From NCBI RefSeq assembly GCF_964188315.1, contig NC_135667.1:20212001-20276000 (forward strand): a DNA stretch of 64,000 nt, written 5' to 3'. The stretch comes from Podarcis muralis (Eukaryota). Shown piece after piece: positions 13,169 to 56,815 of this stretch (its first letter is position 1; every line of letters starts with the position of its first letter). Under the pieces are notes generated by a model, which was given only the letters and a program-made list of their open reading frames with translations, ran no database searches and was not told the DNA's origin. The position numbers were made by a program, and so were the translations under genes.

Positions 13169-14684
13169 CTGCATCAAAAAGAATGTTAACAGTTCATTGT
13201 GTCAAACAGAACTGCAAACAATTAAAATGGGAGTTTACATGAACCTCCTTGGCTACTTAACCGAGGATCAACAACTTACCTTGTAATTAACAAAGCAAAA
13301 TTAACAATAAACATTAACATAAAAATAACAACATAAAAATTAACAACGCTATTAGTACTCTTCTACACTAGAATTTCCTCTGGAATTTTCATGCTTTGCT
13401 CACTTACAATTTATGGGTCATCTGCATGATGTTATCAAATCATTGTCCTCCTGGGTTCTCCCTATGGTGATTCTGTCTTTTGTTCAGACTATACTAGCAC
13501 AATCTCCACAGGGGTAGATCACCTTAGTACTATTCTTCTGTATTTTTCAAAAGCTGTACAGTGATATACCAGGTGGGTGTACCTATCATCATGTATCTAT
13601 TCTTTCACACACCTTCACTATTACCCTTTCCGGTCAGTGCTACTTTAATAGCATGCTTATTTTTAATTACTCTTTTAATTCACACTAAAACACCTTTTCA
13701 ACTATAGTTTGAAAAATATTATTAAAATATTTCTCCAGGACTGCTTGGTGTGTTTTAGTACAATTATTTTTAATGAATCTATAAAAACACATGCAGCCTT
13801 TCTGGTTGGAATCATTTCTTAATTGGTTAATTTGTGCCAAAACAGTTTTTTAGCTTAGCCTTCCTTTTTTTATATAAAAAAAAGTTGTTATAATCCCACA
13901 ATAGCACTGAAATAAAAACAAAACAAAACACTTTTTCCATTTACTATTGCAGCAGGAGATATGAGGTTTTATCAGTCAGTTATGAAAGATGGTAAGCTTG
14001 GATGCAACCCATTTTGTTTTTAAAAGACTTTCTGTTTGTATCTGTCAAAGACTGTTTAGGTCTGGATAACATTAGGATAGCGAGGTAGATTAGATCACCT
14101 TAATATATATTTTTCCAGCTCTGATTTTAAAAATCAAAATGACTCCTTTAATAGAAGTGCAAACCCCTGTCTCACTAAAGTGCAAAGCAAAATTATCCAT
14201 GTTCGTAACACACAGAGACCTGACCTCAGTGTCTCCCTAGCAAGTCAGAACAAATTATTTCAGATTCTTAGTGCAAGTCACAAAGAACTGGGTCACAGAA
14301 CATGATGTGCGTGCGTAAGAGAGAGAGATGGACAGGTCTCGGAGAGGACAAAACTAATTTCTCTTGAGACAGCAAATTAAGCTGCATCTGTTCCATTTCT
14401 TGAGCACTCCCAAGGTACAACTACCTGGGACCAAATAAATCATTCCCTAAGCATTCCAGCTCCCTGCTCAGCTGCTTTGTGGACTTGTTAAGTCTTTTTA
14501 AAAAAGAAGAAGAACAGAATGAGAGCAATAAGGATGATATGAACAACCTCATTTAGTCTTGGACAGATCATGCAACTATGAACTGTCCCCTCTGAGGAAA
14601 AAGCTGTCTGCTTTCACTGTCTGAATATCTGCCTCCAGGGGGCACTCAATTTTAACAGATTTACCAGAGCTTAATATTACACTA

Positions 14685-14909
14685 CAGTGGTACCTCGGGT
14701 TACATACGCTTCAGGTTACATACGCTTCAGGTTACACACTCTGCTAACCTAGAAATAGTGCTTCAGGTTAAGAACTTTGCTTCAGGATAGAAATCGGGCT
14801 CCGGCGGCACAGCGGCAGCAGGAGGCCCCATTAGCTAAAGTGGTGCTTCAGGTTAAGAACAGTTTCACGTTAAGTACGGACCTCCGTAAGTTAACCTGAG
14901 GTACCACTG
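14685..14909 (+). mobile_element. Tc1/mariner (Tigger-like) MITE
   Basis: TIRs cagtggtacctc / gaggtaccactg with TA TSD. Same family at 20276, 40296, 42666, 52208 and 54669. Confidence 0.85.
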
Positions 14910-15494
14910 TACTGAAAAAGTATTGAAAAATTACTATTAATAATATAAATAACAATTTTATTCATGCATTTAGTTAAAATTTGTATCCTGAACCATCACT
15001 AAACCTCAGGGTGAAGTACCACAATTAAAAACTAGCACTTCCAAATACAAGGGAATTAAACAATATATGCTAAAACCCCATATGCTTCAGAAGCTTAATT
15101 TTATGCAATTAAAATTAAATGAAAAGGTCTTGCTAACAATCCTCAAAACATAATAGCTTACTTAGGGGTATATTTTGAGAATATGATTCATACAGAATTC
15201 AAGCTAATCATAAACGGAGCATTTTGACAATTGCCAGTTAAAAGAATGAAATAATTAAATCATTTTGAAGTTGCTTTTGGGATATATATATTTTTTGGAA
15301 AATTCAAAAGCATTTCACTGTCCCGAAAGGATAATTCTTAATTTAACACAATAATGATTTTACAGGCAACTGTAACAAAAATCATAGAGCTATCCCTTGC
15401 TGGACACCACACCTTCCTTTATACTAGATACATCTTGGGCTTGCTGTATCCTAACCAGCCCCCAAAACACCTAGCTTATTCTGGCAACACTTAC

Positions 15495-15559
15495 ACATAT
15501 TGGTCCTGATAGGATTGGGACAGATGTTCTTGAAGTCTGCTAACCTCCAGTTTCAGTTC
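15495..15559 (-). CDS. KASH5: KASH5 exon ELKLEVSRLQEHLSQSYQDQY
   Basis: Resembles ELRLEISRLEEQLSQTY. AG and GTAAGT sites; phase 0 to 2. Confidence 0.92.
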
Positions 15560-15671
15560 CTAATGGAGATCACAAAGAGAACCTGATGCACAAGTATGGT
15601 AGCTACTATACTAGCACAAAGTAAAGTGGGGAAGTCTGTATGGGTCTACCTTGCAAGGTCCTGTGTTCAAT

Positions 15672-16975
15672 TCTATAAACTTTTCAATGTTTCTTTTTTA
15701 AATGTTTATTGAATTTTCAGTTTAACATTTCAAAATAAACAATTTACATAATACCATTTAATCAGTGGCTTCCCTCCTTCCCCTTCCATGCTTCATTTTG
15801 TTTGCCTATTATACCTGCATATTTTACTATAACCATTTTAGTCAGTTCTCCAATCGTACAATACTCGAATATTAGCTAACCTGTTGAATTTATCTTAATG
15901 CTGCCAGCGTTTTCGACTGTGTGCAATTATTTTCCATATACTCAACAAAAGATTTCCACTCCTCTTCTTGCTCTCTTATTCTATATGTTAGACCTGCTAG
16001 TTCCACAAATTCTATCATCTTAAATTGCCAGTGTTCCTTACAAGGGACCTCCCTCACTTTCCATTTTTGGGTTAATAATACATGAGCTGCTGTTGCAGCA
16101 TACATAATTTTTTCTGACACCTGGAAACTTCTATTTGAACTATTCCTAACAAGAATGCCTTTGATCTTTTTGGGAAAGTTGTTTTAAACGTTTTTTTCAT
16201 CTCATTGTAAATCATTTCCCAATACTCTTTAACCTTTTTACATGCCCACCACACATTTCCAACACGAATCTGATTCTACTTTATACATCTTAGCCAACCT
16301 ACTCAGAGTTAGATACCATCTATGGATCATTTTCATGTGATTCTCTTTCAATGTATAGCATATAGTAAATTTCAAACCATATCTTTTTTCCATTCTTTGA
16401 GGCAACTTAAATTATTAACAATCAGGATCATTTAGAATAATTTTAGGAAGTACAGTGGTACCTTGGTTCCCGAAGGGCTTAGTTGCCGAACAAATCGGCT
16501 CCCAAATGCCACAAACCCAGAAGTGTTCCAATTTGCAAATGTTTTTTGGAAGCCAAACATCCAACACGGCTTCTGCTTGAGTGCAGGAAGCTCTTGCAGC
16601 CATTGGAAGCTGCGCCTTGGTTTTCAAATGGATTCAGGAGTCTGTTTGACGAATGAAGTTTGAGAACCAAGGTACCACTGTATATTAATTTTGATTGATG
16701 AAATTTAACCTAGTAGGGAAAGCGTCATCCTTTACCATATTGCCAACTCTTTTTAAATCTCCTTCCACAGTTTAATATAATTATCTTGAAATAAGTTGAG
16801 ATTTCTCATGGTCAGCCAAATCCCCAAATTTCTCGACTGCTCATCCATGTTTTTGACTAACATCTTGGTCTTTTCTGTGTCTATTTTAAAAACCCGCCAC
16901 TTCTCCAAAACATTTAATTTGCTCTAATGCCCTGGGAACACTTATGTTCAGTTTCATATATATATCTAGATTCCT
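15672..16975 (-). mobile_element. Degenerate 3' fragment of L1 ORF2, interrupted by a MITE
   Basis: HVWWACKKVKEYWEMIYNEMKK and AHVLLTQKWK...ELAGLT are typical of the L1 ORF2 C-terminus. T-rich tail remnant at the left end. Confidence 0.8.
16453..16680. mobile_element. Tc1/mariner MITE nested in L1 (related copy at 61858-62074)
   Basis: cagtggtacc...ggtaccactg TIRs with TA TSD. Confidence 0.8.
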
Positions 16976-16991
16976 CCTAGTCCCACATTAC

Positions 16992-17051
16992 CTGTACTAC
17001 CATTCTGTATTCATTCAAGGTGACTGTTAGTTCTTCAGCGTGTTTTGTTTT
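16992..17051 (-). CDS. KASH5: KASH5 exon KTKHAEELTVTLNEYRMVVQ
   Basis: Same 20-aa length as, and similar to, RTRDVESLAQTLEEYRVTTQ. Canonical sites. Confidence 0.92.
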
Positions 17052-17866
17052 CTGTAAACGCAAAACATAATCAAACATAATAAAAACCAAACAAACAAAA
17101 AAGTAACTCAACCTCATCTCAAAACAAACCATAATCTTACAGAACCTCTGTCACCAAACTAATTTTTCAAAATATGGATGGTTTCTTTTCCGAACCAAGT
17201 TATGTCTAGCGATGAGGTTGCAGTGACACCTAGTGATCCCTGAATACAGAGGCAAGCCAAAGCTGTAAAAAATGTCAGAGGAAGGATGCATATAATACTT
17301 CAAAGATTATCAAGTCATACAAATAAGACCATAATGTTTAATCAATTATAACTTTAAAACTATTGTTTTTACCCGTGTGGAACTATAATCAACCAAATAA
17401 AAGTTGTGCAACTAATCACAATTAATCAACTAAGATTTGTTTAATTAGGTAGCAATGTAATATACAAACTAGCAACTTATCATGATGTCATGTACTCATT
17501 CAGATAGCTTCTTTCCCAATGGAAATAGAGGGGAAATGTCTTCATGACACAGGTGGATGCTGCAAATGACTCCCTGTTCATACCACTGGAAACTACTACT
17601 CAGTTCATGGACTCACCAGTGTACAAAATTGTTCAATGGGTAACCTGTAATTAAACCCAGTGTGTTGACAGGATAGCAAAAACTCTTTTCTTCCATGCAA
17701 AGAGGTGTACAACTTGAAAATTCACCACATTACGAACAAAATGTCGTGCTACTATCACCTACAGTATCACTGAACCCAGGAAAACAGATACTCCCAGACG
17801 CTCACCTCCATCATAGCACCTTAATTTCAGACTTCCAATTTGTCATTTTTCCTATATATACCTCAC

Positions 17867-22211: not shown

Positions 22212-22428
22212 GGCCTGGGGAGAGTTCTGAGGGCCAGATAAGGAGGCCTGCATCTGGCACCCAGGCCTGAGGTTTTCCATCCCTACTCTAACTACTCATC
22301 ATCTTAAAAGAAAATTCACCATGCCTCAGGTTCCCTTAGAATACTAACAATACAGACATCTCTCAGGGAATTTAATATTGAAACCAAGGCCATGTGTAAG
22401 GCAATATCTGACTACTACAATTACTAAC

Positions 22429-22609
22429 CCCTCTTGTCGACAGTCTGAGATCCAATCTTTCATAACTGCACAGAAGGTAGAAAAATCAACAGCAATCCCT
22501 CTCTCTTGAGGGTCCAACCTCTTATATAGAGACCGAAACCTCCAGTCTTCACAGTTCTGCCCTGTCATCTCCTGCAAGTATTCAATGATTCGGAAGACAG
22601 ACACCTCTC
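22429..22609 (-). CDS. KASH5: KASH5 exon (EF-hand-like) GEVSVFRIIEYLQEMTG...LDPQERGIAVDFSTFCAVMKDWISDCRQE
   Basis: Similar to GTVAVAQVLAYLEAVTG...VDLDTFLVVMRDWIAACQ. Phase 1 to 2. Confidence 0.95.
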
Positions 22610-23464
22610 CTATAACCAGAATACAGGTAGACAGAATTACACAGGTAGGTAAAAAACTCAAATATAAAAATTGCATAGAACAATAAATCTGGATTTAGTT
22701 GTCTCTGCTATCTACCAATGCAAGCTATTATGATACGTTTTATATGTCTTTGTTTCTCCAGTTTAGAAAAAAATGAGGCATTTGTAACTGATAAAATCGT
22801 CAGTCATAAATATATGAACTGTATATATAAACTACACATATCTGTATTGTTTTAAAATACCCCAGAGCAGTAGCTCACAAAGCAATTTTGCTTGGTGTGA
22901 AAAGTAATGTGAATTTATATTTAATTTTTAATCCATTGGCTTCTAGTCTCCATGATTAAAGAAAATGAGTGATGTATCAGGAACCAACTTTCAAGAAAAA
23001 TAGGATTTTTAAAGGAATAGTAGCTTTGTACCACTGCTTCCCTTTCCCACCCACTTCCTTCTTATTATTACCTTTTTCTTGTCTTTTCTTCTCTTTCTAT
23101 TATACCTTAAGTAAAATAAATTTATGTAACTTTGAAGTACTGGGAAGGGTCCTGGATAATGTCTATCAATGAATTATTTTTATTTATTTTTTGCACATCC
23201 TAGTCAATAAAACTTTGTCTAAGAAGAAGAAAGTATTCCATCTTTCTGCTAGGACTTATTGTCATTAAAGTTGACCTGGAATTGTGTACTTCTTCAATAC
23301 AGTCATGTTAGGTTCACTGACAAAATGACATATAGCCAAGAGTCTATAATATATAACCTGATGCTAAACTATTCTGAAAGGTATTTGCACATCTTAACAA
23401 AAAACTGATCTCCCAGCAGTTTTGAAGACTGATAGTTTTCAACTGATATTAAAAAACTTTCTAC

Positions 23465-27476: not shown

Positions 27477-28367
27477 CGCCCATGTAGGTAGCTAGCCCTC
27501 TTGTTTTCTGCACCCTCCTCATTGATTTAATTGTCTGAAGAGAACAGTACAATTTACAGTACTGTACAATAAAAAGCACACAAAAAAGCATGCATGCCTT
27601 GTGGGATATCTTTGGGAGAAGAAAAGTCTCAGGAGTAAACCCTACACAACATGGACGTAGCCAGGATTTATGTTGGAGGGGGAAGGCTTCATGTTAGGGG
27701 GAGCAGAAACTTAGTTAAGTATTTATATTGATTGGGGGTGGGGGGCTTGGCTATGCCCATGCTACACAAATCCAGAGTGGAGTCCCAAAGATAGTTGGGT
27801 GGGGCCTTGTATGCCTCTTCCGCAACTCCTGCAGCCAAGCTGGTGCCGAATGTATTGCTCTGCTTTCCTTTGAGGGGGACAGCCCATAAACTCCATACAC
27901 CACCCAGGCTTGCACCCCTTGCAATGTATATACTATAAGCAAGCCTCCCAAAAGCAACTCCTCAGCTTCCTAGTTCTCTTGCCACTTCCTGCCTAAGCTG
28001 AACCATTACCCTAAAAGTGGTACGGAAGATGGGATTTTCAGAATGCAGATGTTCTTTTTAGCTATAAATATTTAACAGTTCCCCCTGTTGAATAAATTTC
28101 TTCCGTGTAAAGAATAAGAGACTTTGGTAATTAAGCAGTGTAGAAATAGCTTAAATAAATAAATCTGCATTGCGAACAAAGCAACATTTGCACAGCTAGT
28201 GGTGTGAATGATTTAATTAACAAAAACTTTTTCTTTTTTGCTGAATGGAATCTAGAAATAAGTGGATTATGAGGGAAAGTACAGAGATTAAGATGATAAG
28301 CATAAAAAGGGTTGTGAGCATTGAAGAGTAACAAGCTATGTAAATTATGGGCCAAAAATAATTGTAA

Positions 28368-28710
28368 TTAGTAAAAGCCAGGCCCAATGTACTGCCCCAT
28401 TTCATTAGCCAATTGCTTGAGTTCCTGGAAATCTGCTTGTTTGGGATCAGCCATATCTTCCTCCCATGGCAACTGCCTTTTCTCGTCATAGTCTTCACTG
28501 AGCCCCTTTGGTTGGCCAATATCTTCCATGGAATAAGGAGATCTGGGCAGACTGACTAATGCTAGTTGGCCATCTTGCACAGAGTCATCATAATAAGCAT
28601 CCTCTTTGTCACGACGCATCAGGATTGGCTGGTAGAAAGAGAGCTGTTGGTCTGGTCTACTAATATCCACACTGTTCTCTGGATTTTCACATGTTGAAAC
28701 TGTTGTATAT
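28368..28710 (-). CDS. DKK3-like terminal exon (YTTVSTCENP...acidic tail...FQELKQLANEMGQYIGPGFY*)
   Basis: ctttctctcctag acceptor; phase 2 matches the previous exon. Supplies the last CRD2 Cys, as DKK3 HSLVYVC does. Acidic tail. Confidence 0.88.
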
Positions 28711-28750
28711 CTAGGAGAGAAAGCAACCGATTGACAAGACTGAATGAGTG

Positions 28751-28760
<10 letters not shown>

Positions 28761-28797
<37 letters not shown>
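28761..28797. repeat. (AT)n microsatellite
   Basis: Visible tandem repeat. Confidence 0.95.
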
Positions 28798-28807
<10 letters not shown>

Positions 28808-28939
28808 ATGTATTTATACACACAGTGCTTTTTTCTAAAAAAAAAATGTTTAGGGATACACTCATTTTCCTACTCATATTGAAATACAGCCCCTCAATGA
28901 GGCCAAACTTAGATTCACAAAATGTTTAGGGGTATGCGT

Positions 28940-29160
28940 ACCCCTTCATCCCCCAGAAAAAAGCACTGAGCACGCACACACACCCCACACACTCTACTTT
29001 TCTGTGTTTAAGATTAGGTTTTTTTACTTTAAAATTATGTGAAAAACTGTGGGTCATCTTATACACAGGGCAAATTCCCCCCTGTTTTCTTAAATTGGAG
29101 TCCCAAAAGATAGGAGGCGTCTTATACATGGGGGCGTCTTATACATGAAAAAATACGGGG
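28940..29160. mobile_element. DNA transposon/MITE fragment (ggcgtcttatacatg repeats, aaaaaatacgg end)
   Basis: Terminal motif typical of TcMar-type non-autonomous elements. Only one end recognised. Confidence 0.45.
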
Positions 29161-29526
29161 GGGTATCATCCCAGTCCAATCAACAGTAATTGCATCTTGC
29201 AAAGTATCCTGAAACAATATGTGGAGCAAATGCAATAATATAAGACTTCATTTATTTTATCTTAAATCAGTCTTGCAAAACAGAGTACAATTTTATTAGT
29301 ACATGGTTCATTGGGGTATTATTATTGTAATTAATTAGTAAATTGTCTTAATGTGATGTACAATAAAAATCAAAACAAAAAAACAAAATCCAACCTAGTT
29401 AAAAACGCAAGAAACAGCAGACAGACTTAAAACAAAATGAAAACAATGCAAAACAGACAGTCTTGCAGCTACTTTAGTTGCAGCTTTCTCTTGTGAAGAA
29501 TTCTACAGAGACAGAATCCTCCTTAC

Positions 29527-29689
29527 CTTTTAGCTCTGCACTTCAGCCCTTGGGCACATGGGCAATACTGGCTAGGTCTGGGAAAGGCTGTGAGGCTGCC
29601 CCAACCCATCAGTCCAAAGAGGGAACTGGTGGGAATCTGGCATACTTCCCCTTCCTTTGGATAAGGAGTGCAGACTGGGAACGAGAGAG
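29527..29689 (-). CDS. DKK3-like CRD2 exon LSFPVCTPYPKEGEVCQIPTSSLFGLMGWGSLTAFPRPSQYCPCAQGLKCRAK
   Basis: Aligns with DKK3 LLFPVCTPLPVEGELCHDP...CPCASGLLC. AG and GTAAGG sites; phase 1 to 2. Confidence 0.95.
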
Positions 29690-30118
29690 CTGTGTTGGAG
29701 ATAGGACAGAGATTATAAAGGATTATGTGTAGAAAATCCACAAAGTAAAATCTGCCTGGAATATCTGCTATACAAGATACACTGGATTGGTTCACACGTA
29801 ACACTAAGACAAAATATGTCATGGCATGAATGAGCTACTATACTGGTGCACATTTAGAAAAATTCAGCCGCTTAGCTCCTCTCCTTGTGAGCTAAACCAT
29901 AGTTAGTCTCTTAGCATTATGTGCAAATCCAGTCTTGTGGTTTGTTTCAGTAGCCCAAACCAAACACAAGCTATAACCAATACCTCCTGCTCTTGGCTTA
30001 CTGATTGTGATAATGAGGACAGGGGTTATATGAGGACCATGGTGTGAGAGGCAAAGATTAACTGTCTCTCCATGTGCACCGTGGTCTCAGTCTGGATTAT
30101 AGTCCCCAGGAATTGGTA

Positions 30119-30452
30119 AAAAGGTAAAGGGACCCCTGACCATTAGGTCCAGTCGTGACTGACTCTGGGTTTGTGGCGCTCATCTCGCTTTATTGGCCAA
30201 GGGAGCCGGTGTACAGCTTCTGGGTCATGTGGCCAGCATGACTAAGCTGCTTCTGGCGAACCAGAGCAGCACACCCGTTGGAATGGTACCTATTTATCTA
30301 CTTGCACTTTGACGTGCTTTCAAACTGCTAGGTTGGCAGGAGCTGGGACTGAGTAACGGGAGCTCATCCCGTCGCGGGGATTCGAACCGCCAACCTTCTG
30401 ATCGGCAAGTACTAGGCTCTGTGGTTTAACCCACAGCGCCACCTGCGTCCCA
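30119..30452 (+). mobile_element. Sauria SINE
   Basis: aaaggtaaagggacccctgaccattagg head. 13-bp TSD ccaggaattggta at 30106-30118 and 30453-30465. Confidence 0.92.
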
Positions 30453-30598
30453 CCAGGAATTGGTACTTTCAGTTTAAAAGCTTTCACACAACTCCCAAGT
30501 AAAGCAGTCAACATCACAAAATATGAGCAGACCAAATCCGAGGGTAGAAGGAAGTAGATTATCACGCCGGAGGCATGAGTACATAAAAACCATCTTAC

Positions 30599-30746
30599 AG
30601 TTGCTGGCGGTGCAACACAGCCCCTGAGCACACTTGTCCCGGCGTGGGTCACATCTTGTTCCGCTCTGACCACGGCTCACACCTTTTGCACACCTGCCCC
30701 CCACACATAGGTATCCCAGACAGCATTCCCTGTCCTTCCAGCATAT
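30599..30746 (-). CDS. DKK3-like CRD1/CRD2 exon ICWKDRECCLGYLCVGGRCAKGVSRGQSGTRCDPRRDKCAQGLCCTASN
   Basis: Aligns with DKK3 LCTRDSECCGDQLCVWGHC...GTICDNQRDCQPGLCC. Phase 0 to 1; canonical sites. Confidence 0.95.
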
Positions 30747-31230
30747 CTAGGAGACAAAGCATGATGATGACACAGCATTTATTTTCTGAAGTTCAAACTA
30801 GAAAATTCATTTAAAATACAAGGCACTACCAGTGAAAAGACCCTGCCTCATTTTATTTATTCAGGATGTGCTACTCAAAAGGCCAGCTTCTGTGTTTGCA
30901 TTTCAAAATATGAGCAGACTAATACCAAAATTGCACAGGACCTTTTCTCTCTTTTTCTGATACCCTTTTTTTCTTTCTCGCTCTTGCTCTCTTCCTGGCC
31001 AGCAGGCTGTCTGTCAGAGGAAGGGCAGATTCCTCTTGCCGGAGGCCTGAACTGATCGCATTCGAGAGCTTTTGAAATTAGGCAGAGGGCCACATGCAGA
31101 CTAGGACTGCAGGTTGCCAGCACTCTTGTGGAAAGACTTTTGCTTTGGAGCCTCTCGTTTTAGAATACCCCTTTCTGCGGTAGAAATATTTCCCAGGGAC
31201 AGTTCTGGCAGCAAAGTTGAGCGTACTCAC

Positions 31231-31323
31231 TGTATTCTTGACCTTACACTGCCGACACCGGGAAGCAAGGAAGGACTTGAAGCAGAACTGGTCCTTTTGG
31301 CAGTCACTGTCACTCACACATTC
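31231..31323 (-). CDS. DKK3-like CRD1 exon ECVSDSDCQKDQFCFKSFLASRCRQCKVKNT
   Basis: 93 nt with the same 31-aa length and Cys spacing as DKK3 ECIIDEDC...CQPC. AG and GTGAGT sites; phase 0 to 0. Confidence 0.95.
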
Positions 31324-32312
31324 CTGCTGGAGAGGAAGGACATATTTTAAAAGGGCTACAAGACCATTGCACTAGCAAGTTCCCTATTTCGTTGCTGGGT
31401 AATGGCTGAATTTAAGACTGCAGTTGGCTTCTGTGGAGCATCTTAGCTGGCTACTAGGATGGGACTTCTCCCTACCTCAGCTCAAACCTGTAAGTTTCCC
31501 ATAGATAGCTCTACATGTAAGAAAAGGTAATAGAGTGTTACTCCTTTTGGAATATTAATGGGTACTGCAAACTTCATTTCTGAATGCACACCAGAATATA
31601 AACAGCTCCATTTCCCATGTATATTCCCAACTAGCATTGTATTCAGTCATAGGGAATTTAACTGTGCGCTTAAGCACAGGCTCCAAGCTCTCCCATTCCT
31701 TGCTTCCCTTGAACTAGGACAGGGGTGGGGAAACTTTTTTCTGCCCAAGGGCCACATTCCCTTCTGGGCAGCCTTCCAGGGGCCACATGCCAGGGGTGGG
31801 GTCAACAGCGGCGACTTACAAAGGCCAGATTCCTATACAACCTGCATCCAGGGAAGCAAGGACCGTAGTTCAAGGGCACATCTTCTGAGGCTGGCAAAAG
31901 CATTCAAGAAGGTTGTGGAGCAGAGCTGGTGAACTCATAGGGAGGGTGTGCAGCCTACAGAAAGTCCTGATGGCTATTTAATGAGGCCTGTAGGGTCACA
32001 TTTGGTCGCCAGCCTGAGCTTCACTGCTCCTGGACTAGGAGAAGCTCTGCTGCAGGCCTTCATCAAGAGCCCTGCTAGAGAACTGTATAGAAACCTATTG
32101 ATAAAGCTTTTAATGTTACCAACACTTGTGTGGAACTTGGAGCCAGTGTGGTGTAGTGGTTAGAGTGCTGGAATAGGACCCAGGAGACCAGGGTTCAAAT
32201 CCCCACTCGGCCATGAAACTCACACTGAGTGACCATGGGCCAGTCACAGTCTTTCTACCTCACAGGGATGTTGTGAGGATAAAATTGGGAGGAAGAGAAC
32301 CAAATATGCCAG

Positions 32313-32609
32313 TGTTATGTACTGAAGTTCTCACCCTGGGCCAGCAGGGGGATACTGTAGATAGTTATGCAAATGAAGGATCGAAAAGTGACGTTCAGTG
32401 ATTGGATAGTTTTGTATGCAAATGAAGGATCGAAAAGTGACATTCCGTGATTGGATAGTTTTAGAAAATGGCAACAGTTGCATTGTTCTGGAGCTCTATA
32501 TAAGCAGGCTGACTGAGCTCCTCAGCCTAGTTCTGTTCTGGCATCTGAATAAAGAAGAGCTGTTTAAAGAATCGCTGTGTCGTCTGACATGTTCACCCAC
32601 AACTTAACA
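32313..32609 (+). mobile_element. Short solo LTR (Gypsy-like) inserted in an older SINE-like repeat
   Basis: TGTT...AACA ends; TSD gccag / gccac. TATATAA at 32497, AATAAA at 32548, and a 49-bp tandem duplication. Confidence 0.8.
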
Positions 32610-34660
32610 GCCACCTTGAGCTCCTTGGAGGGGGGTATAAATGTAATAAATAAAGAAAACAAAAACACAGCAGCCCCAAGAGGCTATCTCGTCACCTCTC
32701 CCACCTCATGGAAGAATTCAGATCAGACAAAAAGAAAGCACCCACACAAGCAGTGCTTGGAGCACATGAAAGACAGTCAGAAAATTGCAAATAAACACCA
32801 GCTGTTTTGCCTTACATGCCACAAATTCTCCTGCAAACTACCTCAGTTTGGAAGCGGCATTTCTAGTGCACAGACGTTTGTCTTAAAATGTTTGTGCCAT
32901 TTATCTCCACAAGAATCCTTCACAGGTTTGGCAAACACAGGATTCCAATGTACAGCACCCGTTTTGAGAATTGTTTCAATTCTTACTCTTACATACAGGA
33001 GACACACACATAAAGCACAGCTGGAAAATACCGTAGTTTTAAGTATGGTCTGGTATGACAGTCAGATGCATAACGATCTCTTGGTGGTTTGATGTTTTTT
33101 CTTCAAAAAGAAGACATAATGTGGGAAACCTCTTTTAGTTCAGGTTTCCTTTTTCGATGCAAGTGTGTAACCTGTTCGATTTGAAAGGAAGAGTGAAGTG
33201 CCAGATAAAACCTCAGAAATTCATTTGGGTGAGTGATTTCCAATGGATGGGGTGTCAATGCCCTGCGTAGGTTTCTGCCTCTCTCCAACATTCATGCACA
33301 GAAAGGTATGGCTTATTTATTTATTTTGTAATTTATTCCAGTCGCAGAGTACAGCTTTTCTTGGTATGGAACTATATAGCGAGCCAAGAACAAGGTTGCT
33401 GTTGAAGCGGCTAGTCATATACTGAGTTTTCAGATTTTAACAAGAATTTGCTTCCTGTTATCAGATTAACAAGTTGCTCTACTCTGTCTCAAGCAGGGTG
33501 GAATTTTGTTCTTGTTTATTTTCTCGCTCTTGTTTTTCTGTAAAAACAATAACAAAAATGATTTAATTTTTATTGTTTTTACAGGGGGGGAAATACAAAA
33601 GAGCATGGTGCTGATAGCACCAAGGTCACAGGTTTGATCTCCGTATGGGACAGCTGCATATTCCTGAATTGCAGGGGGTTGGACTAGATGATCCTCAGGG
33701 TCCCTTCCAACTGGGATTCTATTGCATATGGAATATCTTTATTTAATGTTGAGCATCAATATCAGTACAAATTTATTCAGTCGATTGCTGTTTCCTGGGC
33801 TGGTGACTATCCAATTTAACTCTATGTTTTAATCTAGCTGCTCAGATACCAAATTTTGTTCTGTGTGGAAATGATTCTGCATATCTTTATTTGGAAATTT
33901 CATATATATTTGGGGATGTAAAGTTTTATTCCATGTTGTGAGGCCTTTTGATTATAGACAGTGAGCCTGAAACCAAGACTGATGGGGGAAAATGGGTTAC
34001 CTTGGCACATAACTTTGAATGCCCCAGCACAGACAGATTTAACTTACAGGCCAGGTTTTCGGTCTAACCAACCATTTCCCAGCCTGCTACAAGAAGAAAG
34101 TGCCAGAAAGGGTGTGTGTGTATATATATTTCTCTCTTTTTTCCTTCCTCTCTGCACAGAGACAATTCCAGTCTGTTTTCTTAGAGCCAAATGTTGCTAT
34201 TTCTGAACAGGACTGGGCGTAATCAAAGAGGAGAGCAAAATTGAAGTAACCTGACAAAATTGATTTCAGTGGGGGAGTTGGGCTGCTCTCATTGAAACCA
34301 ACAGGACAAACTGCTCACAGTTTGAGGGTGTAATATCAAACACTGCTGGTAATTACTATAGCTTGTAGGTCAGTGACAATATGACAGGTGTAAGAAGAAT
34401 TATGGGAATTATTGTGGAAATAATAAGAATTATACTCCCTTGCTACCAGCTATGCGTGGGGTGGAACTGCTGCCACCTCTCTCTTTCCCTTCAGATTCAA
34501 CACCTACCTTTTCCACAGTTACATCTGCACCATACATTTAAAGCACATGCCGCTCCTGATAAGAATCCTGTAAGCTGTAGTTTGTTAACAGTGCTGGGAA
34601 TTGAACTCTGTGATAGGTAAACTACAGTTCCCCGAGTTCTTTGGAGGAAGCCATGTGCTT

Positions 34661-34774
34661 CCAAACTGACCAAACTGCGGGAGGTAGTGGAGGACGGAGG
34701 TGCCTGCTGTGCTCTGGTCCATGGGGTCACGAAGAGTCGGACACGACTAAACGACTAAACAACAACAACAACAA
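34661..34774 (+). mobile_element. BovB/RTE LINE 3' end
   Basis: ggggtcacgaagagtcggacacgact plus a (caa)n tail. 8-bp TSD atgtgctt. Confidence 0.85.
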
Positions 34775-35260
34775 ATGTGCTTTAAATGTATGGTGTGGGT
34801 GTGATGGTAGCTATGCTTAAGAACATTTCACAGCAGTCACCCATGTTTCTTCCCTCCCTGCGTTGTTTTCCCACTGTTGATTTTAAATTGTAAGCTCCTT
34901 GCAAGCAGAGACCTGTGTATGTTGCCTAGGTGCACTGTTACATGCAGTGGTAGCACAGGAAGATTTGTTGTTGTTGTTTTGAATCCCGGCCAGGATCCAG
35001 GTGGTTCTATCTGAGCTATTCTGTATTCAAGAACCTGATTCTATAACATTAACTTTAGAAAAGAAAAATACAAAATGCTCGTTCTCAGGGTTTTGTTTTC
35101 AAAAGGAAAGATTTTTATTTCAAGAATTTGAGAGAAACTCTCTTCTCCTTTTGGAGGATTCTCTCCCCAGCCTGCCACCCTGTGGATGTGAAAGAGGAAA
35201 TAGCTAGGAAACCAGAGACATTCTCTGCTGCCCAGGCAAATTAGAGGTTTCCCTCCTGCC

Positions 35261-35596
35261 TTATATTTTCCGCCAGAAGAAAAGGAAATGATGCTTTCGT
35301 GGGAGGAGCTTGCGGTTTGGGGTGACAGGCAGGGCCTTCTTCTTGATGGGGTGGGGGGCTGTCAAAAGCCCATTCCGAATGGCCAGCAGCCTGTGCCTCC
35401 TGTCAGTGGCCGGCTCTTCCTTTTCCCAGTTGGCTTCGGGGATGGGCTTGCTCTTAAGGTGCTGGGGCAAGCGGAAGATTAGAAAGGTCAGCCTAGGCCT
35501 AGGCTGGGGTGGGCCCAGCTTGAGGAATCTGAGCCCAGTGCTCTCTCTGTCTGCCTCAGCGCCATTTTCGTCCTGACTAGCCACTGGCTTTTTCTC
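35261..35596 (-). CDS. DKKL1: DKKL1-type terminal exon (EKKPVAS...PRLTFLIFRLP...TDRRHRLLAIRNGL...KLLPRKHHFLFFWRKI*)
   Basis: Motifs match mammalian DKKL1 PRVAFWIIKLP, EKRHRLQAIRDGL and RLSPRKTHLLY. Phase-0 acceptor tctttccag. AATAAA on the minus strand at 35114-35119 followed by a U-rich element. Confidence 0.93.
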   Translation of the reverse strand, partial: EKKPVASQDENGAEADRESTGLRFLKLGPPQPRPRLTFLIFRLPQHLKSKPIPEANWEKEEPATDRRHRLLAIRNGLLTAPHPIKKKALPVTPNRKLLPRKHHFLFFWRKI

Positions 35597-36323
35597 CTGG
35601 AAAGATACAGATAAAATGCAACCAGGGTGAGGATATTACCTCAGTGGTTTGTGGGAATCAGCCTGAGAAGGACTTTATGCTTAGAATGAGAAGTGGGAGG
35701 GTGTCCAAGCTGGGGGTCCACATTCTTTTACCCCCTCCAGGAGAGAAGAGGGGGTCAGAGGAAGAGGAATTCCTGGGGTAGGGAAAAGACCAATCTATGG
35801 GAATAGGGAGAAAGAGGGGCAATCTGTGGCCCTCCAGATGTTGCTGGGCTCCATCATCCCCTGACCCCTGGTCCAGAGGACCAGAAGTTCACCCATCCCT
35901 CCTTTTGGGGAAAGCAGAGGTACACTAGTCTAACAAGGTTTATTGGTCATGATAGTTGAACTGAACTGCCAGTATCAAATGCTGGGGACAGATAGCACAG
36001 GGCAACTGCAGCCTTCCATCCCTACTTATAAACTTCCCAGCGTAAAAACCCACCTGTGTAGATCAGGCTAGTTTCTACCCCTCCCTATTCTCTATCCAGG
36101 GAACTGAGAGGCATGATCAGAGTTCTAAGACATATTCAAGCCCGGCATAGACATGCAAGGGGGATATGAAGTATGCCCGCAGAAGGAGAGAGGTCTAAAG
36201 ACCAGACAGAGAGGTCTGGAGGGATGCATCTAGACTCTTGCCACACACACCAAGTCACACGCAACCAAAAAATTAGCTGAGGAAAGGTGACTGGGCTTGT
36301 TACCCTCCTGAGCGTGCACTGAC

Positions 36324-36422
36324 CTCATCCTCTTCCTCCTCCTCTGGGCGGGCGTCTGACTGTTCAATAGAAGTCACCGTTTTCTCTGAAAACACCATCT
36401 CTCCTGTACGGTTATCAGTCAT
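36324..36422 (-). CDS. DKKL1: DKKL1 soggy exon MTDNRTGEMVFSEKTVTSIEQSDARPEEEEEDE
   Basis: Matches DKKL1 MTDNKTGEVLISE and DKK3 ITNNQTGQMVFSE. Phase 0 to 0; GTCAGT donor. Confidence 0.95.
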
Positions 36423-36742
36423 CTGCATATTTTGAGAGAACAACATTAAGATTGCATGGGAGAGACAGAACAAGTGAAGAAGCCTCCTTACTTTTAAACA
36501 TTTGTGAGGCGGCAGCATGGTTGACGGCAGAAACATCCTCATGGCCAAGGCTCCACAGAGCTATGGGGACAGTTGACTTGGCTTCACAGGGGCAAGGAGG
36601 TGTCCTCAAGTGCCTGCACTAGACTTGCGACTCCCTTAGGAAAGAGATGGAGAGCCTATGCCTGTCCCGTCAGCCCCAGACAACATGGCCAGGGGTCATG
36701 GATTTTGGGAGATGTAGTCTAGCAACACCTTATTCCCCTCAT

Positions 36743-39719: not shown

Positions 39720-39857
39720 CCGGCTCTGCTCAAAGATGTTGCGAAACTCCTTGAAGAGCCTCTCCACGCTGGGGGGCAGGAAGGCAGCAGATGCCGTGGT
39801 CCTTCCTTGCATCAGAGCTGTCAGGCACCAGAATCCCCACACCAGCGGCAGCAGCAT
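39720..39857 (-). CDS. DKKL1: DKKL1 first coding exon with signal peptide MLLPLVWGFWCLTALMQGRTTASAAFLPPSVERLFKEFRNIFEQSR (whole exon 39720-39897)
   Basis: Long pyrimidine tract plus AG at 39898. Hydrophobic leader; GTAAGG donor in phase 0. Confidence 0.85.
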
Positions 39858-40526: not shown

Positions 40527-42665
40527 TATTTAACACGCATTTAAAGAACATGATTTCCCCCAATGACTCCTGGGAGCTGTAGCTACCATTCTCATAGAGC
40601 AACAATTCCCAGTGCCCTTAACAAACTACAGTTCCCAAGATGATTGGGGGGGGGGGTGTTTTAAATGTATGGTGTGGATCTACCCTGAGGTGGTGGCACC
40701 AAAAGACAGACTAAGCGTGTTCCTGAGGAGGGTGGTCCATGAGGAAAAACAGGGCTCTCAAATTTCAGCGAGGAAATACAGTACTAAAATTTGCCCCCCA
40801 CCTCTCTCACTTCATTTACATCATTATTGTGGTGCCCCCCTCCCCATGGCACCAGTGTCCAGCACAGCCCCTAAAACCACCTCTGATATTGGCCTGCCAC
40901 CCTCCTCGCACCCACCCCTTCTCGGCACCCACACCCTTCGGGGTCAGCCACCCCTCTGCCCCACACAGGGGCTGCAGCCCACCTCTTCTTAACCCCCTCG
41001 ATTCACTAGCCAGCCTGTAACTAAGCAGAACTCCCTGTCGGTCAGTTTCTGACGGGCCCATTTGAAAAAAGGTTCCGGTTCCGGAATGTGCCAGCTTTGC
41101 CTGGCATCTGTCAGGGCAGAGCAGCTGTTTCTCCACACAGACCCATACAGTGTATGTGTGGGGCGTCTTTTTACAGCCTTCCCATAAGCTGCCATAGGCC
41201 CCTTGAAGGATTTAGAGGGCCTCACATCCATCACCCTATTTGCAATGTTTAGTTTGAGCTAGGGTTGACTCCAGAACATAACGTGAATCCCGGAGAGTTC
41301 AGCACTAGACGGAACATATGAAGTAACAATGAAGGACACTTCTGAGCATGTCAAGAGCGCTTTCCCCTCACCGTTCAGGAAACAGTCAGCCCCCACTGCA
41401 GAATATTAAGAAGCAAGGCTTTTAGGTCAGAAGGGCTGGCCTTCAAAGCCCGGGAAGGCAGGTGAAGGCTGCAATCCTAACTCCACTTACCTGGAAGTAA
41501 GCACCTCTGAATTCAATAGGTCTTACTTCTGAGTAGATATGGTTAGGATTGCACAAACGTCCACCTCAGTGTCTTCTCCCTCTGCCTCCAGTAATCCAAA
41601 GGACCAGATCCCCACATCTCTTTATCATTCACACATTTAAACCCAGCTGCTAAACCCAGCACAACTTACAAAAAAGGAAAAGCAGCACACAATAAAGGCC
41701 AAGATATTCAACATTAAAAGCACAGGACTGAAAGAAAACATCTTCGAAGGAGGACTTATGGAGATCCCTGCTGGATCAGCCCTAGGTCCATCTAGGCCCC
41801 ACACAGGGCCTGAAGGGCATATTGCTTGTAGACATAGAATTTCTATTAAGTCATAGTGGCCAATGGTGGTCATAGTGTGGTGGTTAAAGTGTTGGACTAG
41901 GACCTGGGAGACGAGCCCTGCACCTCACTGGGTGATATTGGGACAGCCTCTCGGCCAAATTTACCTCACAGATTTCCAGTGGGCATCAAACAGAGCAGGA
42001 AGAGCTCTATGGCTGACTACACACCATACATGTAAATCATGTAAATCAATATCTTGGGAACTGTAGTTTCTCCCTCAGAACTACAAGTCCCAGCACCTTT
42101 AAATTACAATTCCCAGGGTTCTTTGGGGGAAGTAATGTTTAGAGTCAATCCTGACATACCCACACTTCCGCTTGTCCCATTGCTTTTCCCCGGGAGAACA
42201 GTGGCAATTTGTGTTTTATTTTGCTCCAATTTAGCACTGAAGTGCAGGTTTTCCCTGGGAAAAGAGCAGGGCAAGGGGGAAATTGCTCGGATTCATGTCT
42301 AGAAAGTGTGGGTTAAGCAGAAAACGCTTCAAGCCCCTGCTTTCTAGGTAACAGGACAAGCGGAAATGTGGATGAGCTCAAGTAATGCTATTAAAAACTC
42401 AGATAGCAACAGATCTATGAAGAGCAGCATGCTGTTTATGGAGCTGGTGGAAGTTGTGGTCCAAAAAAACATCTGGAGGGCCCCAGACTGGGGAAGGTTG
42501 CTTTTAATTACTGTACCACTGTCATTTTCAATCTGTCTTCCTCAGAGACTTGAACTGGGTTGCTAACTAACCAGACAGAACCACTTTTCACAGCAGTGTG
42601 GTTTGCAGGTATTATTAGCTGGTGACAGTGTCCACTAAGCAATCCCTTACTTAGCAAGTTAAGTA

Positions 42666-55689: not shown

Positions 55690-55882
55690 ATAGAGCCTGG
55701 CAGCTGGGGCGAGGGGGCCAGCCCCTCTGGGGAGATGGGGGACACTGGGGAGAAGGGTCTGGACAACGATGCAGAAGGGGTCTGGAGCCCAGATATTGAG
55801 CAGAGTTTCCAGGAGGCCCTGGCCATCTACCCACCCTGTGGGAGGCGGAAGATCATTCTTTCGGATGAGGGGAAGATGTACG
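55690..55882 (+). CDS. TEAD2: TEAD2 first coding exon (I/M)[63 protein letters not shown]; whole exon starts at 55673
   Basis: Invariant TEA-domain sequence. ATA start in accATAg context; in-frame ATG at 55735. GTAGGT donor in phase 1. Confidence 0.95.
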
Positions 55883-56815
55883 GTAGGTGGGACTTAACTT
55901 TGACCCATTAGACCGGCTGCTCTTGTCCTTAGTTCTCTTTGGGAATCGTCCCGCAAGCCATAATATATGAGTAGCAATAGGCTTAGAATATGTGAGGTAA
56001 AAAAAGAAGAAGACAACGCTTTTCTAGCTCCCTGAAGAAATGGAAGGAGCTGGGAAGGTGGCCACTGATGGTGCTGTATTCCTGCGGTACACCGCTAGCA
56101 GTGCCTTTTCCTTTCCAGCTCTGAGAGGAGGAAAGAGGTGGTCTTCAGATGCAGCCTCCATGGTACTGTGCCATAGATGCTGTGCAGAAGGCTCTCTTTA
56201 GGGACAGAAAAGAAACAAAAGAGCCAGCAGGGCCAGGACGAGAGATGAGGGAGCTACATGCACCGTTGTAAACAGAGGTCCTACAATGTGCCTAGACCTA
56301 TAATGACAGGGACTCACCTGGAGGCAGTTCTTACTCTCCATAGGTGAGCAGCTAATGACAGTTCCATTTTCAGTTCTGCAATTTGTAGCATCCCTTTCTT
56401 TCAGGGAACTGCATTTGGACAAGTCACTCTCTCTTAGCCTGACCCACCTCACAGGGTTGTTGTGAAGATAAAACCACAGAAAGCGCCCTGGGGTCTTTAG
56501 AGGCAGTGTGGGGTGTACTTTTGGTGATGGGGGACAACCGTGTGCAAGGTCTGCTGGAGGAGGGGTCAGGTTTGCATCCACCCACCTTTTTTAAACATCT
56601 GCGGTTGGCGTGACCTGACAGTCCAGATGATTCAGAAGTTAGCAGGGTTGTGTCTCTGAGCATGTGCAGAGTTAGGGAGGCTGCAACCTGCCCCATGTGG
56701 CAACCTAGCATTGTTGTCAGTGGCATGGTCAAGAGAGGCGGGTGAATTCCACCTCTGTATATGGTGCCCAAGTTGGATGGGTTGTTTTCCTGATTTCCTG
56801 CCTCTTCTCTCTCAG

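What the first reader, a model, noticed from the sequence alone, without database searches (positions are those of the whole stretch)
31231..36422. One gene, two proteins: alternative last-exon choice between DKKL1 (235 aa) and a full DKK3-like protein (372 aa)
Seen: the soggy exon donor at 36324 is phase 0. Both the DKKL1-type last exon (acceptor 35596, own stop and AATAAA at 35114-35119) and the CRD1 exon (acceptor 31323) are phase 0. I found no separate signal-peptide or soggy exons between 31.3 and 35.2 kb. The join ...EEEEEDE|ECVSDSDC reproduces the DKK3 exon 3-4 junction. Inference: mammalian DKKL1 arose when a new terminal exon was inserted in a DKK3 paralogue's intron and the CRD exons were later lost, and this lizard preserves the intermediate with both outputs, perhaps testis versus soma.
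Basis: partly seen in the sequence, partly recalled or inferred. Interest (0 to 1): 0.92.

Follow-up and report, generated by a model that had tools for sequence, protein, structure and literature searches.

The report
Lizard DKKL1 gene makes two proteins
In this wall lizard one gene makes both the short sperm-type protein DKKL1 and a full Dickkopf-3-like protein by choosing between two alternative ends, which shows how mammalian DKKL1 probably arose; gene databases already model both forms, but I found no paper that explains them.

Summary
On the minus strand, exons 1-3 (39857-39720, 37692-37558, 36422-36324) encode a signal peptide and a soggy-type N-terminus. The exon-3 donor (36324) is joined in RNA contigs to two acceptors.

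- **Short form:** acceptor 35596 opens a DKKL1-type terminal exon with stop at 35263-35261 and AATAAA at 35119-35114, giving 235 aa. This joint is in three of four runs.
- **Long form:** acceptor 31326/31323 leads through four exons carrying both Dickkopf cysteine-rich domains (20 Cys intact), with stop at 28370-28368 and ATTAAA at 28217-28212. This joint is in all four runs.

One correction: the commoner distal acceptor is 31326, three bases upstream of 31323 (a tandem CAG|CAG acceptor). It adds one Gln and gives 373 aa; 31323 (372 aa) appears in one run.

The gene lies between a TEA-domain gene and KASH5, as mammalian DKKL1 does. Alligator has the same layout. A snake has lost the cysteine-rich exons and a turtle has lost half of them. 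Amphibian and lungfish "DKK3-like" proteins are orthologues of the long form.

The data are not new: RefSeq already lists both products as "dickkopf-like protein 1" isoforms in Podarcis muralis and other reptiles. No paper in the searchable library interprets them. Testis-versus-soma use is untested. Earlier scan notes on this come only from this same window.

The parts
39720..39857 (-). Exon 1, coding part: ATG at 39857, signal peptide (MLLPLVWGFWCLTALMQG...) and the start of the soggy-type N-terminus; 46 codons, donor gtaagg, phase 0
   Evidence: tblastn of sauropsid DKKL1 proteins; translation and splice sites; identical to RefSeq P0029/P0019
37558..37692 (-). Exon 2: 45 codons (EDVLGK...KLPSNYHNEE...GNATVYSHREISK), phase 0/0
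   Evidence: N-terminal HMM hit E 1e-24
36324..36422 (-). Exon 3 (soggy exon): 33 codons, MTDNRTGEMVFSEKTVTSIEQ...EEEEEDE. Its donor (gt at 36323-36322) is shared by both isoforms
   Evidence: RNA contigs end exactly at 36324 in four runs
35091..35596 (-). Proximal, DKKL1-type terminal exon: acceptor at 35596, 111 codons (35596-35264), stop TAA at 35263-35261, 3' UTR to about 35091
   Evidence: Joint 35595->36323 with CT..AC ends in X7, X25, X3. The X3 contig ends at 35091, 23 nt past the AATAAA. phmmer hits to sauropsid DKKL1 tails at E 6e-41 to 1e-9. Tail HMM E 2e-51
35114..35119 (-). AATAAA poly(A) signal of the short mRNA
31231..31326 (-). First CRD1 exon (CRD1a), (Q)ECVSDSDCQKDQFC...CRQCKVKNT. 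It has a tandem CAG|CAG acceptor at 31326 (adds Gln) or 31323, phase 0/0
   Evidence: Joints 31326->36324 (X25, X3, X1) and 31322->36323 (X7). Pfam Dickkopf_N E 4e-6, above the curated cut-off. P0029 contains the Gln form
30599..30746 (-). Second CRD1 exon (CRD1b) plus the start of CRD2 (ICWKDRECCLGYLC...CAQGLCCTASN), ends in phase 1
   Evidence: Joint 30746->31231 in all four runs
29527..29689 (-). CRD2 exon (colipase-type fold, ...FPVCTPYPKEGEVC...YCPCAQGLKCRAK), ends in phase 2
   Evidence: phmmer against PDB matches the DKK1 C-terminal domain at E 2.6e-4
28368..28710 (-). Distal last coding exon: end of CRD2 and an acidic C-terminal region ending ...MGQYIGPGFY, stop TAA at 28370-28368
   Evidence: the same C-terminal motif occurs in amphibian and lungfish DKK3-like proteins
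28212..28217 (-). ATTAAA, candidate poly(A) signal of the long mRNA
   Evidence: Sequence only; the 3' end was not mapped with reads
31327..36323 (-). Intron removed in the long mRNA (4997 or 5000 nt). It contains the proximal terminal exon and repeats (a tRNA-like SINE at 34586-34679)

Best explanation
This is the wall-lizard orthologue of DKKL1 (Soggy), and it is still a complete DKK3-paralogue gene. Transcripts share exons 1-3, which encode a signal peptide plus the soggy-type N-terminal region. After exon 3 the pre-mRNA takes one of two routes.

1. The exon-3 donor is spliced to a proximal terminal exon inside intron 3, and the transcript is cleaved after its AATAAA. This gives a 235-aa secreted protein without cysteine-rich domains (CRDs), the DKKL1 type.
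2. That exon and its poly(A) site are skipped, and the donor is spliced 5 kb further on to four exons encoding both Dickkopf CRDs and an acidic tail. This gives a 372/373-aa DKK3-like protein.

This is 'skipped terminal exon' intronic polyadenylation, in which splicing and cleavage compete.

Shown here: both junctions in RNA, intact frames, conservation of both halves, and the same layout in alligator.

Inferred:
- The layout was already present in the last common ancestor of lizards and crocodilians, and probably of all amniotes.
- Mammals, snakes and in part turtles later lost the CRD exons, leaving DKKL1 alone.
- The choice between routes is regulated by tissue.
For: **RNA.** GT..AG joints 36324->35596 occur in 3 runs, 36324->31326/31323 in 4 runs and 31231->30746 in 4 runs. 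Exon-3 contigs break exactly at the donor. Contig depths of the two branches are of the same order as the exon-3 contig (for example X25: 15.8 and 11.1 against 20.2). One short-form contig ends 23 nt after the AATAAA.

**Sequence.**
- All splice sites are canonical and all frames are open.
- The CRDs carry 20 Cys.
- Dickkopf_N scores E 1.3e-10 on the long form.
- The PDB sequence search matches DKK4 CRD1 and DKK1/DKK2 CRD2.

**Database models.** The long product is 100% contained in RefSeq 'dickkopf-like protein 1 isoform X4 [Podarcis muralis]' (P0029). The short product equals P0019 apart from one residue. Rhineura isoforms X2 (long) and X4 (short) diverge exactly at this donor.

**Orthology.**
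- A TEA-domain exon lies at 55.8 kb (+) and a KASH5-type EF-hand_9 exon at 22.3-22.7 kb (-).
- KASH5 follows the gene in alligator, turtle and snake.
- Foldseek's top hit is human DKKL1, E 5e-6, aligned over residues 8-227.

**Constraint.** Podarcis versus Rhineura identity is 85% for the N-terminus, 81% for the tail, 80% for the CRDs and 78% for the C-terminus.

**Phylogeny.** The long forms cluster with amphibian and lungfish DKK3-like proteins, 100/100 apart from DKK3.
Against: - The RNA evidence is assembled contigs, not reads. Each junction is carried by only 28-31 nt on the exon-3 side (k-1 overlaps), at or just under the tool's 31-nt bridging rule.
- No single record spans exon 1 to the last exon, so full-length isoform structure is inferred.
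- In run X1 (a related organism) the DKKL1 junction is not listed. Its proximal exon appears unspliced (35153-35673), an unspliced contig runs from the intron into the first CRD exon (31299-31591), and CRD depth (62) exceeds exon-3 depth (24). An extra internal start is therefore not excluded.
- Some annotations (Paroedura, Pelodiscus) model a separate 'DKK3-like' gene (PMC10967326).
- No mammalian DKKL1 sequence was recovered by sequence search. The Foldseek match rests on a low-confidence model (pLDDT 55).
Confidence: 0.88

Rival explanations
1. There are two adjacent genes. DKKL1 ends at about 35.09 kb, and a separate 'DKK3-like' gene made only of the cysteine-rich-domain (CRD) exons has its own promoter and leader. 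On this view the exon-3-to-CRD junction is occasional read-through (conjoined) transcription.
For: - Paroedura picta and Pelodiscus sinensis are annotated with separate CRD-only 'DKK3-like' genes (PMC10967326, which reports different tissue profiles for DKKL1 and DKK3L).
- Run X1 has an unspliced contig running into the first CRD exon, and higher CRD depth than exon-3 depth.
Against: - The exon-3-to-CRD junction is present in all four runs, at depths comparable to the DKKL1 junction.
- No ATG-plus-hydrophobic first exon with a phase-0 donor lies between 31.33 and 35.11 kb.
- The frame upstream of the acceptor has a stop and no ATG.
- There is no AG acceptor at the end of the X1 contig.
- CRD exons alone would encode no signal peptide.
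- RefSeq models in at least 8 reptile species join them to the soggy exons.
Confidence: 0.06
2. Only one output matters. Either the short mRNA is premature-polyadenylation noise of a DKK3-like gene, or the long mRNA is a relic read-through of a DKKL1 gene whose CRD exons are on their way out.
For: - Snakes have lost the CRD exons. A turtle has lost CRD2 and the last exon and has a Cys-to-Leu change in CRD1. The long half is therefore dispensable in some lineages.
- The short form's predicted structure is mostly disordered.
Against: - Both halves are conserved about as well as the shared N-terminus between lacertid, amphisbaenian and gecko.
- Tail motifs (RHRLLAIR.GL) are invariant across squamates, tuatara, turtles and crocodilians.
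- All 20 Cys are intact in lizards and alligator.
- Both mRNAs have similar contig depth.
Confidence: 0.05

Closest known systems
Mammalian DKKL1 / Soggy (human Q9UK85, mouse Q9QZL9)
   Same: - Position between TEAD2 (head-to-head) and KASH5/CCDC155. [quoted passage not shown]
- A signal peptide and a soggy N-terminus related to DKK3.
- A CRD-free product of about 230-240 aa.
- Foldseek aligns the lizard short form over nearly its whole length to both mammalian proteins.
   Different: The lizard gene also carries four downstream exons with both Dickkopf cysteine-rich domains and makes a second, full-length product. As described, mammalian DKKL1 has no such exons. The tail is only weakly similar in sequence: no mammal reached E 0.001.
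DKK3 (Dickkopf-related protein 3)
   Same: The domain order of the long form is the same: signal peptide, soggy-type region, CRD1, CRD2, acidic C-terminus. DKK3 proteins align to the N-terminal 117 residues.
   Different: It is a separate paralogue. Ambystoma has both DKK3 and the DKK3-like gene, and the tree splits them 100/100. The long form ends in the ...QYxGPGFY motif, which the two DKK3 proteins fetched here (Ambystoma DKK3, Alosa dkk3b) lack. DKK3 is not known to have a DKKL1-type alternative terminal exon.
Amphibian and lungfish 'dickkopf-related protein 3-like' (Ambystoma P0041, Protopterus P0042, Ascaphus P0040)
   Same: They are orthologous to the long isoform by the tree and the shared C-terminal motif. 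They have the same architecture at 332-383 aa.
   Different: No DKKL1-type short product is annotated or found for them. The only frog locus readable here (Mantella) lacks both the soggy exons and any tail exon.
Alternative last exon / intronic polyadenylation genes (classic case: secreted versus membrane IgM heavy chain; own knowledge)
   Same: One donor, a proximal terminal exon with its own stop and poly(A) signal nested in an intron, and distal exons with a second poly(A) site. The two proteins share an N-terminus and differ in their C-terminal modules.
   Different: Here the two outputs correspond to what are treated as two different gene families in mammals. In several lineages the distal half has since been deleted.

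Membership tests
DKKL1 / Soggy | Genomic position between TEAD2 (divergent) and KASH5/CCDC155 | tested here: met
   TEA-domain exon at 55.8 kb on the + strand (Pfam E 2e-8) and a KASH5-type EF-hand_9 exon at 22347-22694 on the - strand (E 3e-13). KASH5 is the next gene in alligator, turtle and snake. The TEAD paralogue itself was not typed.
DKKL1 / Soggy | Secreted protein with a DKK3-like soggy N-terminus and no cysteine-rich domains | tested here: met
   The short product is 235 aa, with one Cys (in the leader) and no Pfam domain. Its N-terminus aligns to DKK3 of chicken, mouse and human. The signal peptide was judged by eye only.
DKKL1 / Soggy | C-terminal tail homologous to that of mammalian DKKL1 | tested here: inconclusive
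   Foldseek aligns residues 8-227 to human DKKL1 13-231 at E 5e-6 and 24% identity, but the model has pLDDT 55 and TM 0.19. phmmer and profile searches recovered only sauropsid tails.
DKKL1 / Soggy | Testis / acrosome expression | not testable with these tools
   Tissue labels of the runs are coded. Turtle DKKL1 is testis-enriched according to PMC10967326.
Dickkopf family (long isoform) | CRD1 (Dickkopf_N) with 10 conserved cysteines | tested here: met
   Pfam PF04706 E 1.3e-10, 41.9 bits against a cut-off of 25. PDB sequence search matches DKK4 CRD1 at E 5.5e-4. 10 Cys.
Dickkopf family (long isoform) | CRD2 (colipase/prokineticin-type fold) with 10 cysteines | tested here: met
   phmmer against PDB matches DKK1 CRD2 (3S2K_C) at E 2.6e-4 and DKK2 CRD2 at E 0.013. 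10 Cys. Pfam Prokineticin scores only E 0.009, below its cut-off. The fold was not modelled.
Dickkopf family (long isoform) | Wnt modulation through LRP5/6 or Kremen binding | not testable with these tools
DKK3 itself is atypical in this respect (own knowledge).
Alternative last exon (skipped terminal exon) gene | One donor joined to two alternative acceptors in RNA of the same sample | tested here: met
   both joints occur in X7, X25 and X3, and contigs branch exactly at 36324. The bridging sides are 28-31 nt.
Alternative last exon (skipped terminal exon) gene | Proximal exon has its own stop and a used poly(A) site; distal exons have theirs | tested here: met
   Stop at 35263-35261, AATAAA at 35119-35114, and a contig end at 35091. 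For the distal end, the stop at 28370-28368 and ATTAAA at 28217-28212 are seen in sequence only.
Alternative last exon (skipped terminal exon) gene | Regulated (tissue- or stage-specific) choice | not testable with these tools
   Ratios differ between runs. X3 favours the long form, X7 and X25 are about equal, and X1 shows only the long junction. Contig depth is a poor measure and the tissues are unknown.

The most novel reading that the evidence does not exclude
The DKKL1 locus records an 'isoform-first' route to a new gene. An ancestral vertebrate DKK3 paralogue gained an intronic terminal exon by the amniote ancestor and ran for more than 300 million years as a two-output gene, as it still does in lizards, amphisbaenians, geckos and crocodilians. 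It was then reduced independently to the short output in mammals, snakes and, partly, turtles.

On this reading reptiles have a fifth full-length Dickkopf ligand hidden under the name DKKL1. The choice of end would be tissue-regulated, with a germline short form and a somatic long form.
Probability: 0.5. Interest if true: 0.7.

Novelty: new member of a known kind. Interest (0 to 1): 0.55.

Why it matters
DKKL1/Soggy has been known since 1999 as a DKK3-related protein without cysteine-rich domains, but how it lost them is not described in any paper I could find. This locus, together with the alligator, turtle and snake loci, shows the steps still present in living animals:

- a complete DKK3 paralogue;
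- an added alternative terminal exon;
- repeated loss of the Dickkopf half.

It also means that "DKKL1" in many reptiles encodes a real two-domain Dickkopf protein. That matters for anyone counting Wnt antagonists or transferring mammalian DKKL1 function to reptiles.

It also explains inconsistent annotations. The locus is modelled as a separate "DKK3-like" gene in Paroedura and as a fused chimeric model in Podarcis lilfordi; turtle "DKK3L" may be a further case, but that link was not tested.

The limit on its importance is that RefSeq already holds both isoforms, so the new element is interpretation, not data.

Tried and rejected
- **Pfam on the tail and soggy exons:** no family.
- **Search for mammalian DKKL1:** phmmer of the tail against 1.84 billion representatives found only sauropsids. 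Homology to mammals therefore rests on Foldseek, synteny and database names.
- **AlphaFold model of the short form:** low confidence (pLDDT 55). It was used only for the Swiss-Prot Foldseek search.
- **Is the tail exon older than amniotes?** This could not be tested.
  - Ascaphus and Hyla genes are not on record.
  - The axolotl and lungfish genes span more than 1.2 Mb, so no DNA was returned.
  - Mantella was readable but has lost the soggy exons, so its lack of a tail exon says little.
- **Separate promoter or leader for the cysteine-rich-domain exons:**
  - No signal-peptide-like ATG exon was found.
  - The X1 contig 31299-31591 has no AG acceptor at its upstream end and no in-frame ATG, so I read it as unspliced pre-mRNA of a related species.
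- **Rfam over 28.0-40.5 kb:** nothing.
- **Literature:** five searches found no paper on the origin of DKKL1 or on a cysteine-rich-domain-containing DKKL1 isoform (a sixth, ranked no DKKL1 paper and was uninformative). The only paper found that treats reptile DKKL1 as part of the DKK family (turtle, PMC10967326) treats DKKL1 and DKK3L as separate genes.

Full report
**What is in the sequence**

The gene runs on the minus strand. Sauropsid DKKL1 proteins recovered with the tail exon map by tblastn onto four blocks. Splice sites and frames fix the exons as follows.

| Exon | Coordinates | Content |
|---|---|---|
| 1 | 39857-39720 | ATG, hydrophobic leader; 46 codons |
| 2 | 37692-37558 | 45 codons |
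| 3 | 36422-36324 | 33 codons; donor GAG\|gtcagt |
| Proximal terminal exon | from 35596 | 111 codons; TAA at 35263-35261; AATAAA at 35119-35114 |
| CRD1a | 31326 or 31323 to 31231 | first half of cysteine-rich domain (CRD) 1 |
| CRD1b | 30746-30599 | second half of CRD1, start of CRD2 |
| CRD2 | 29689-29527 | rest of CRD2 |
| Distal last exon | 28710-28368 | acidic tail; TAA at 28370-28368; ATTAAA at 28217-28212 |

All eight exons have canonical AG/GT boundaries and compatible phases. The short product is 235 aa. The long one is 372 aa, or 373 aa with the upstream CAG of the tandem acceptor.

**Domain content**

- The first distal exon alone hits Pfam Dickkopf_N above threshold. The whole long form scores E 1.3e-10.
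- A sequence search of the PDB matches residues 125-176 to DKK4 CRD1 and residues 180-260 to the DKK1 and DKK2 C-terminal domains.
- The long form has 20 cysteines in the two domains. The short form has none outside the leader.
- The tail and the soggy exons match no Pfam family.

**RNA evidence**

- RNA runs hold 13-28% of the sampled words of 31231-36422 and 21-25% of 28000-31330, roughly the exonic fractions, so both halves are transcribed.
- Contigs of four runs were laid on 30590-36560. Three runs are from one organism label and one (X1) is from a related label. The GT..AG joints were:
  - 30746->31231 in all four runs;
  - the distal acceptor to the exon-3 donor in all four (31326 in X25, X3 and X1; 31323 in X7);
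  - 35595->36323 in X7, X25 and X3.
- The exon-3 contig ends exactly at 36324. Each branch contig carries 28-31 nt of exon 3. This is the pattern a k=31 assembly graph gives when one sequence has two continuations in the same data.
- Branch depths are of the same order as the exon-3 contig. X7: 13.3 and 10.1 against 16.9. X25: 15.8 and 11.1 against 20.2. X3: 11.7 and 20.4 against 37.6.
- One short-form contig ends at 35091, 23 nt after the AATAAA.

Limits of this evidence:

- These are contigs, not reads.
- The bridging sides sit at the tool's 31-nt limit.
- No single record spans a whole isoform.
- Tissue labels are hidden.

**The odd run (X1)**

X1 shows only the long junction. Its proximal exon is continuous with the upstream intron (35153-35673). 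It also has a contig running from the intron into the first distal exon (31299-31591) with 30 unmatched letters beyond. There is no AG at that point and no in-frame ATG upstream of the acceptor. A scan of 31.33-35.11 kb finds no ATG-hydrophobic-donor exon. I read these contigs as unspliced pre-mRNA from a slightly diverged species (9 differences in 293 nt). An extra internal start is not excluded.

**Identity and prior annotation**

- The 373-aa product is contained without a mismatch in P0029, "dickkopf-like protein 1 isoform X4 [Podarcis muralis]" (435 aa, with an upstream in-frame extension).
- The 235-aa product equals P0019, an earlier "isoform X4" (297 aa), apart from Ser/Ala at residue 113. 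That is the same A>C difference all four RNA runs show at 36359.
- Long, Dickkopf_N-bearing "dickkopf-like protein 1" models exist for Zootoca, Hemicordylus, Rhineura, Sceloporus, Pogona, Tiliqua, Eublepharis, Euleptes and Alligator sinensis. Short ones exist for many squamates, tuatara, turtles and crocodilians.
- In Rhineura the long (X2) and short (X4) isoforms are identical up to the exon-3 end and then diverge.

The two-output structure is therefore already in RefSeq. What I could not find is any paper that notices or interprets it. The turtle DKK-family paper (PMC10967326) lists DKKL1 (soggy only, testis) and "DKK3L" (CRDs only) as separate genes.

**Orthology**

- A TEA-domain exon lies at 55.8 kb on the plus strand, head-to-head with exon 1.
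- A KASH5-type EF-hand_9 exon lies at 22.3-22.7 kb on the minus strand, downstream of the last distal exon.
- This matches the mammalian TEAD2-DKKL1-KASH5 order (Kaneko & DePamphilis 2000, as cited in PMC10967326; own knowledge for human).
- A Foldseek search of Swiss-Prot models with the (low-confidence) short-form model gives human DKKL1 first (E 5e-6, residues 8-227) and mouse DKKL1 third. DKK3 of chicken, mouse and human align only to residues 3/18-117.
- In a maximum-likelihood tree the reptile long forms sit with amphibian and lungfish "DKK3-like" proteins in species order, 100/100 apart from Ambystoma DKK3 and a fish dkk3b. They share the C-terminal ...QYxGPGFY motif.

**Other genomes**

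| Species | DKKL1-type tail exon | CRD exons | Next gene |
|---|---|---|---|
| Alligator sinensis | intact, 14314-14646, 0.9 kb after exon 3 | all four, 17.7-20.5 kb | KASH5 at 26.1 kb |
| Mauremys mutica (turtle) | present | CRD1a (one Cys changed to Leu) and CRD1b; no CRD2 or last exon by tblastn or HMM | KASH5 |
| Thamnophis elegans (snake) | present | none | KASH5, 3.8 kb on |
| Mantella (frog) | none | all four; soggy exons are missing | not determined |

Axolotl and lungfish genes were too long to fetch.

Between Podarcis and Rhineura, identity is 85% for the shared N-terminus, 81% for the tail, 80% for the CRDs and 78% for the C-terminus. The figures against geckos are similarly even. 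Both alternative halves therefore look constrained.

**Mechanism and history**

The best explanation is an alternative-last-exon gene. After exon 3, either the proximal terminal exon is spliced in and its poly(A) site used, or it is skipped and the four Dickkopf exons are used.

Shown here:

- both junctions in RNA;
- intact frames;
- the poly(A) signal and a contig end for the short form;
- conservation of both halves;
- the same layout in an archosaur.

Inferred:

- The layout dates at least to the common ancestor of lepidosaurs and archosaurs. Because mammals have the tail-type protein at the same locus, it probably dates to the amniote ancestor.
- Mammals, snakes and partly turtles later lost the Dickkopf half.
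- The choice of end is tissue-regulated.

Whether the tail exon was "inserted" or arose from intron sequence cannot be told.

**Verdict**

It is not new as data, because RefSeq models both isoforms in this very species. It appears new as an explanation of where DKKL1 came from, and the independent losses in the snake and the turtle strengthen it. I score interest as moderate.

Noticed in passing
window 31323-31328 (-): The distal exon has a tandem CAG|CAG (NAGNAG-type) acceptor. Three runs and RefSeq use 31326, which adds one Gln. One run uses 31323.
   Followed up: yes
window 36359: All four RNA runs read C where the window has A on the plus strand. This changes Ser113 to Ala in exon 3. The older RefSeq protein P0019 has Ala and the newer P0029 has Ser, so it is probably a polymorphism.
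   Followed up: partly
window 40819-41211 (-): An upstream in-frame ORF (MGPSETDRQ...) is used by the RefSeq models as the start. It adds 62 residues in front of the signal peptide, which would bury it. The conserved start in other species is the MLLPLVW Met at 39857. One X3 contig extends 1.5 kb upstream of exon 3, so there is 5' heterogeneity.
   Followed up: no
window 32190-32790, 33590-33790, 34590-34790: Intronic repeats reach very high RNA contig depth (hundreds to about 47,000). ARAGORN calls a tRNA-Trp-like element at 34586-34679 (-), probably a tRNA-derived SINE. Rfam finds nothing.
   Followed up: partly
L004 (Thamnophis elegans) 13877-17649: The snake DKKL1 locus has no trace of the cysteine-rich-domain exons between the tail exon and KASH5 (3.8 kb). 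This parallels the mammalian state.
   Followed up: yes
L003 (Mauremys mutica) 15778-16411: The turtle keeps the two CRD1 exons after the DKKL1 tail exon, with a conserved Cys changed to Leu (QCRELK). No CRD2 or last exon is detectable, which looks like decay in progress. Whether turtle 'DKK3L' of PMC10967326 is this remnant or another gene is unclear.
   Followed up: partly
L002 (Mantella aurantiaca) 10001-68886: The frog DKK3-like gene has a leader exon spliced straight to CRD1. No soggy exons are detectable in the 28-kb intron. Hyla has a similarly short protein (298 aa).
   Followed up: partly
protein P0032 (Podarcis lilfordi, 452 aa): This gene model reads through the DKKL1 tail and then continues into the second CRD1 exon (...FLFFWNKGICWKDREC...). 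It is probably a chimeric annotation artefact of the two alternative ends.
   Followed up: no
window 55795-57100 (+) and 22347-22694 (-): TEA-domain exons of a TEAD gene lie head-to-head with DKKL1, 16 kb away. A KASH5-type EF-hand_9 exon lies downstream.
   Followed up: partly
searches: No bird protein appeared among the short or long DKKL1-type hits, although turtles, crocodilians and squamates are well represented. This may be gene loss in birds or missing GC-rich sequence.
   Followed up: no
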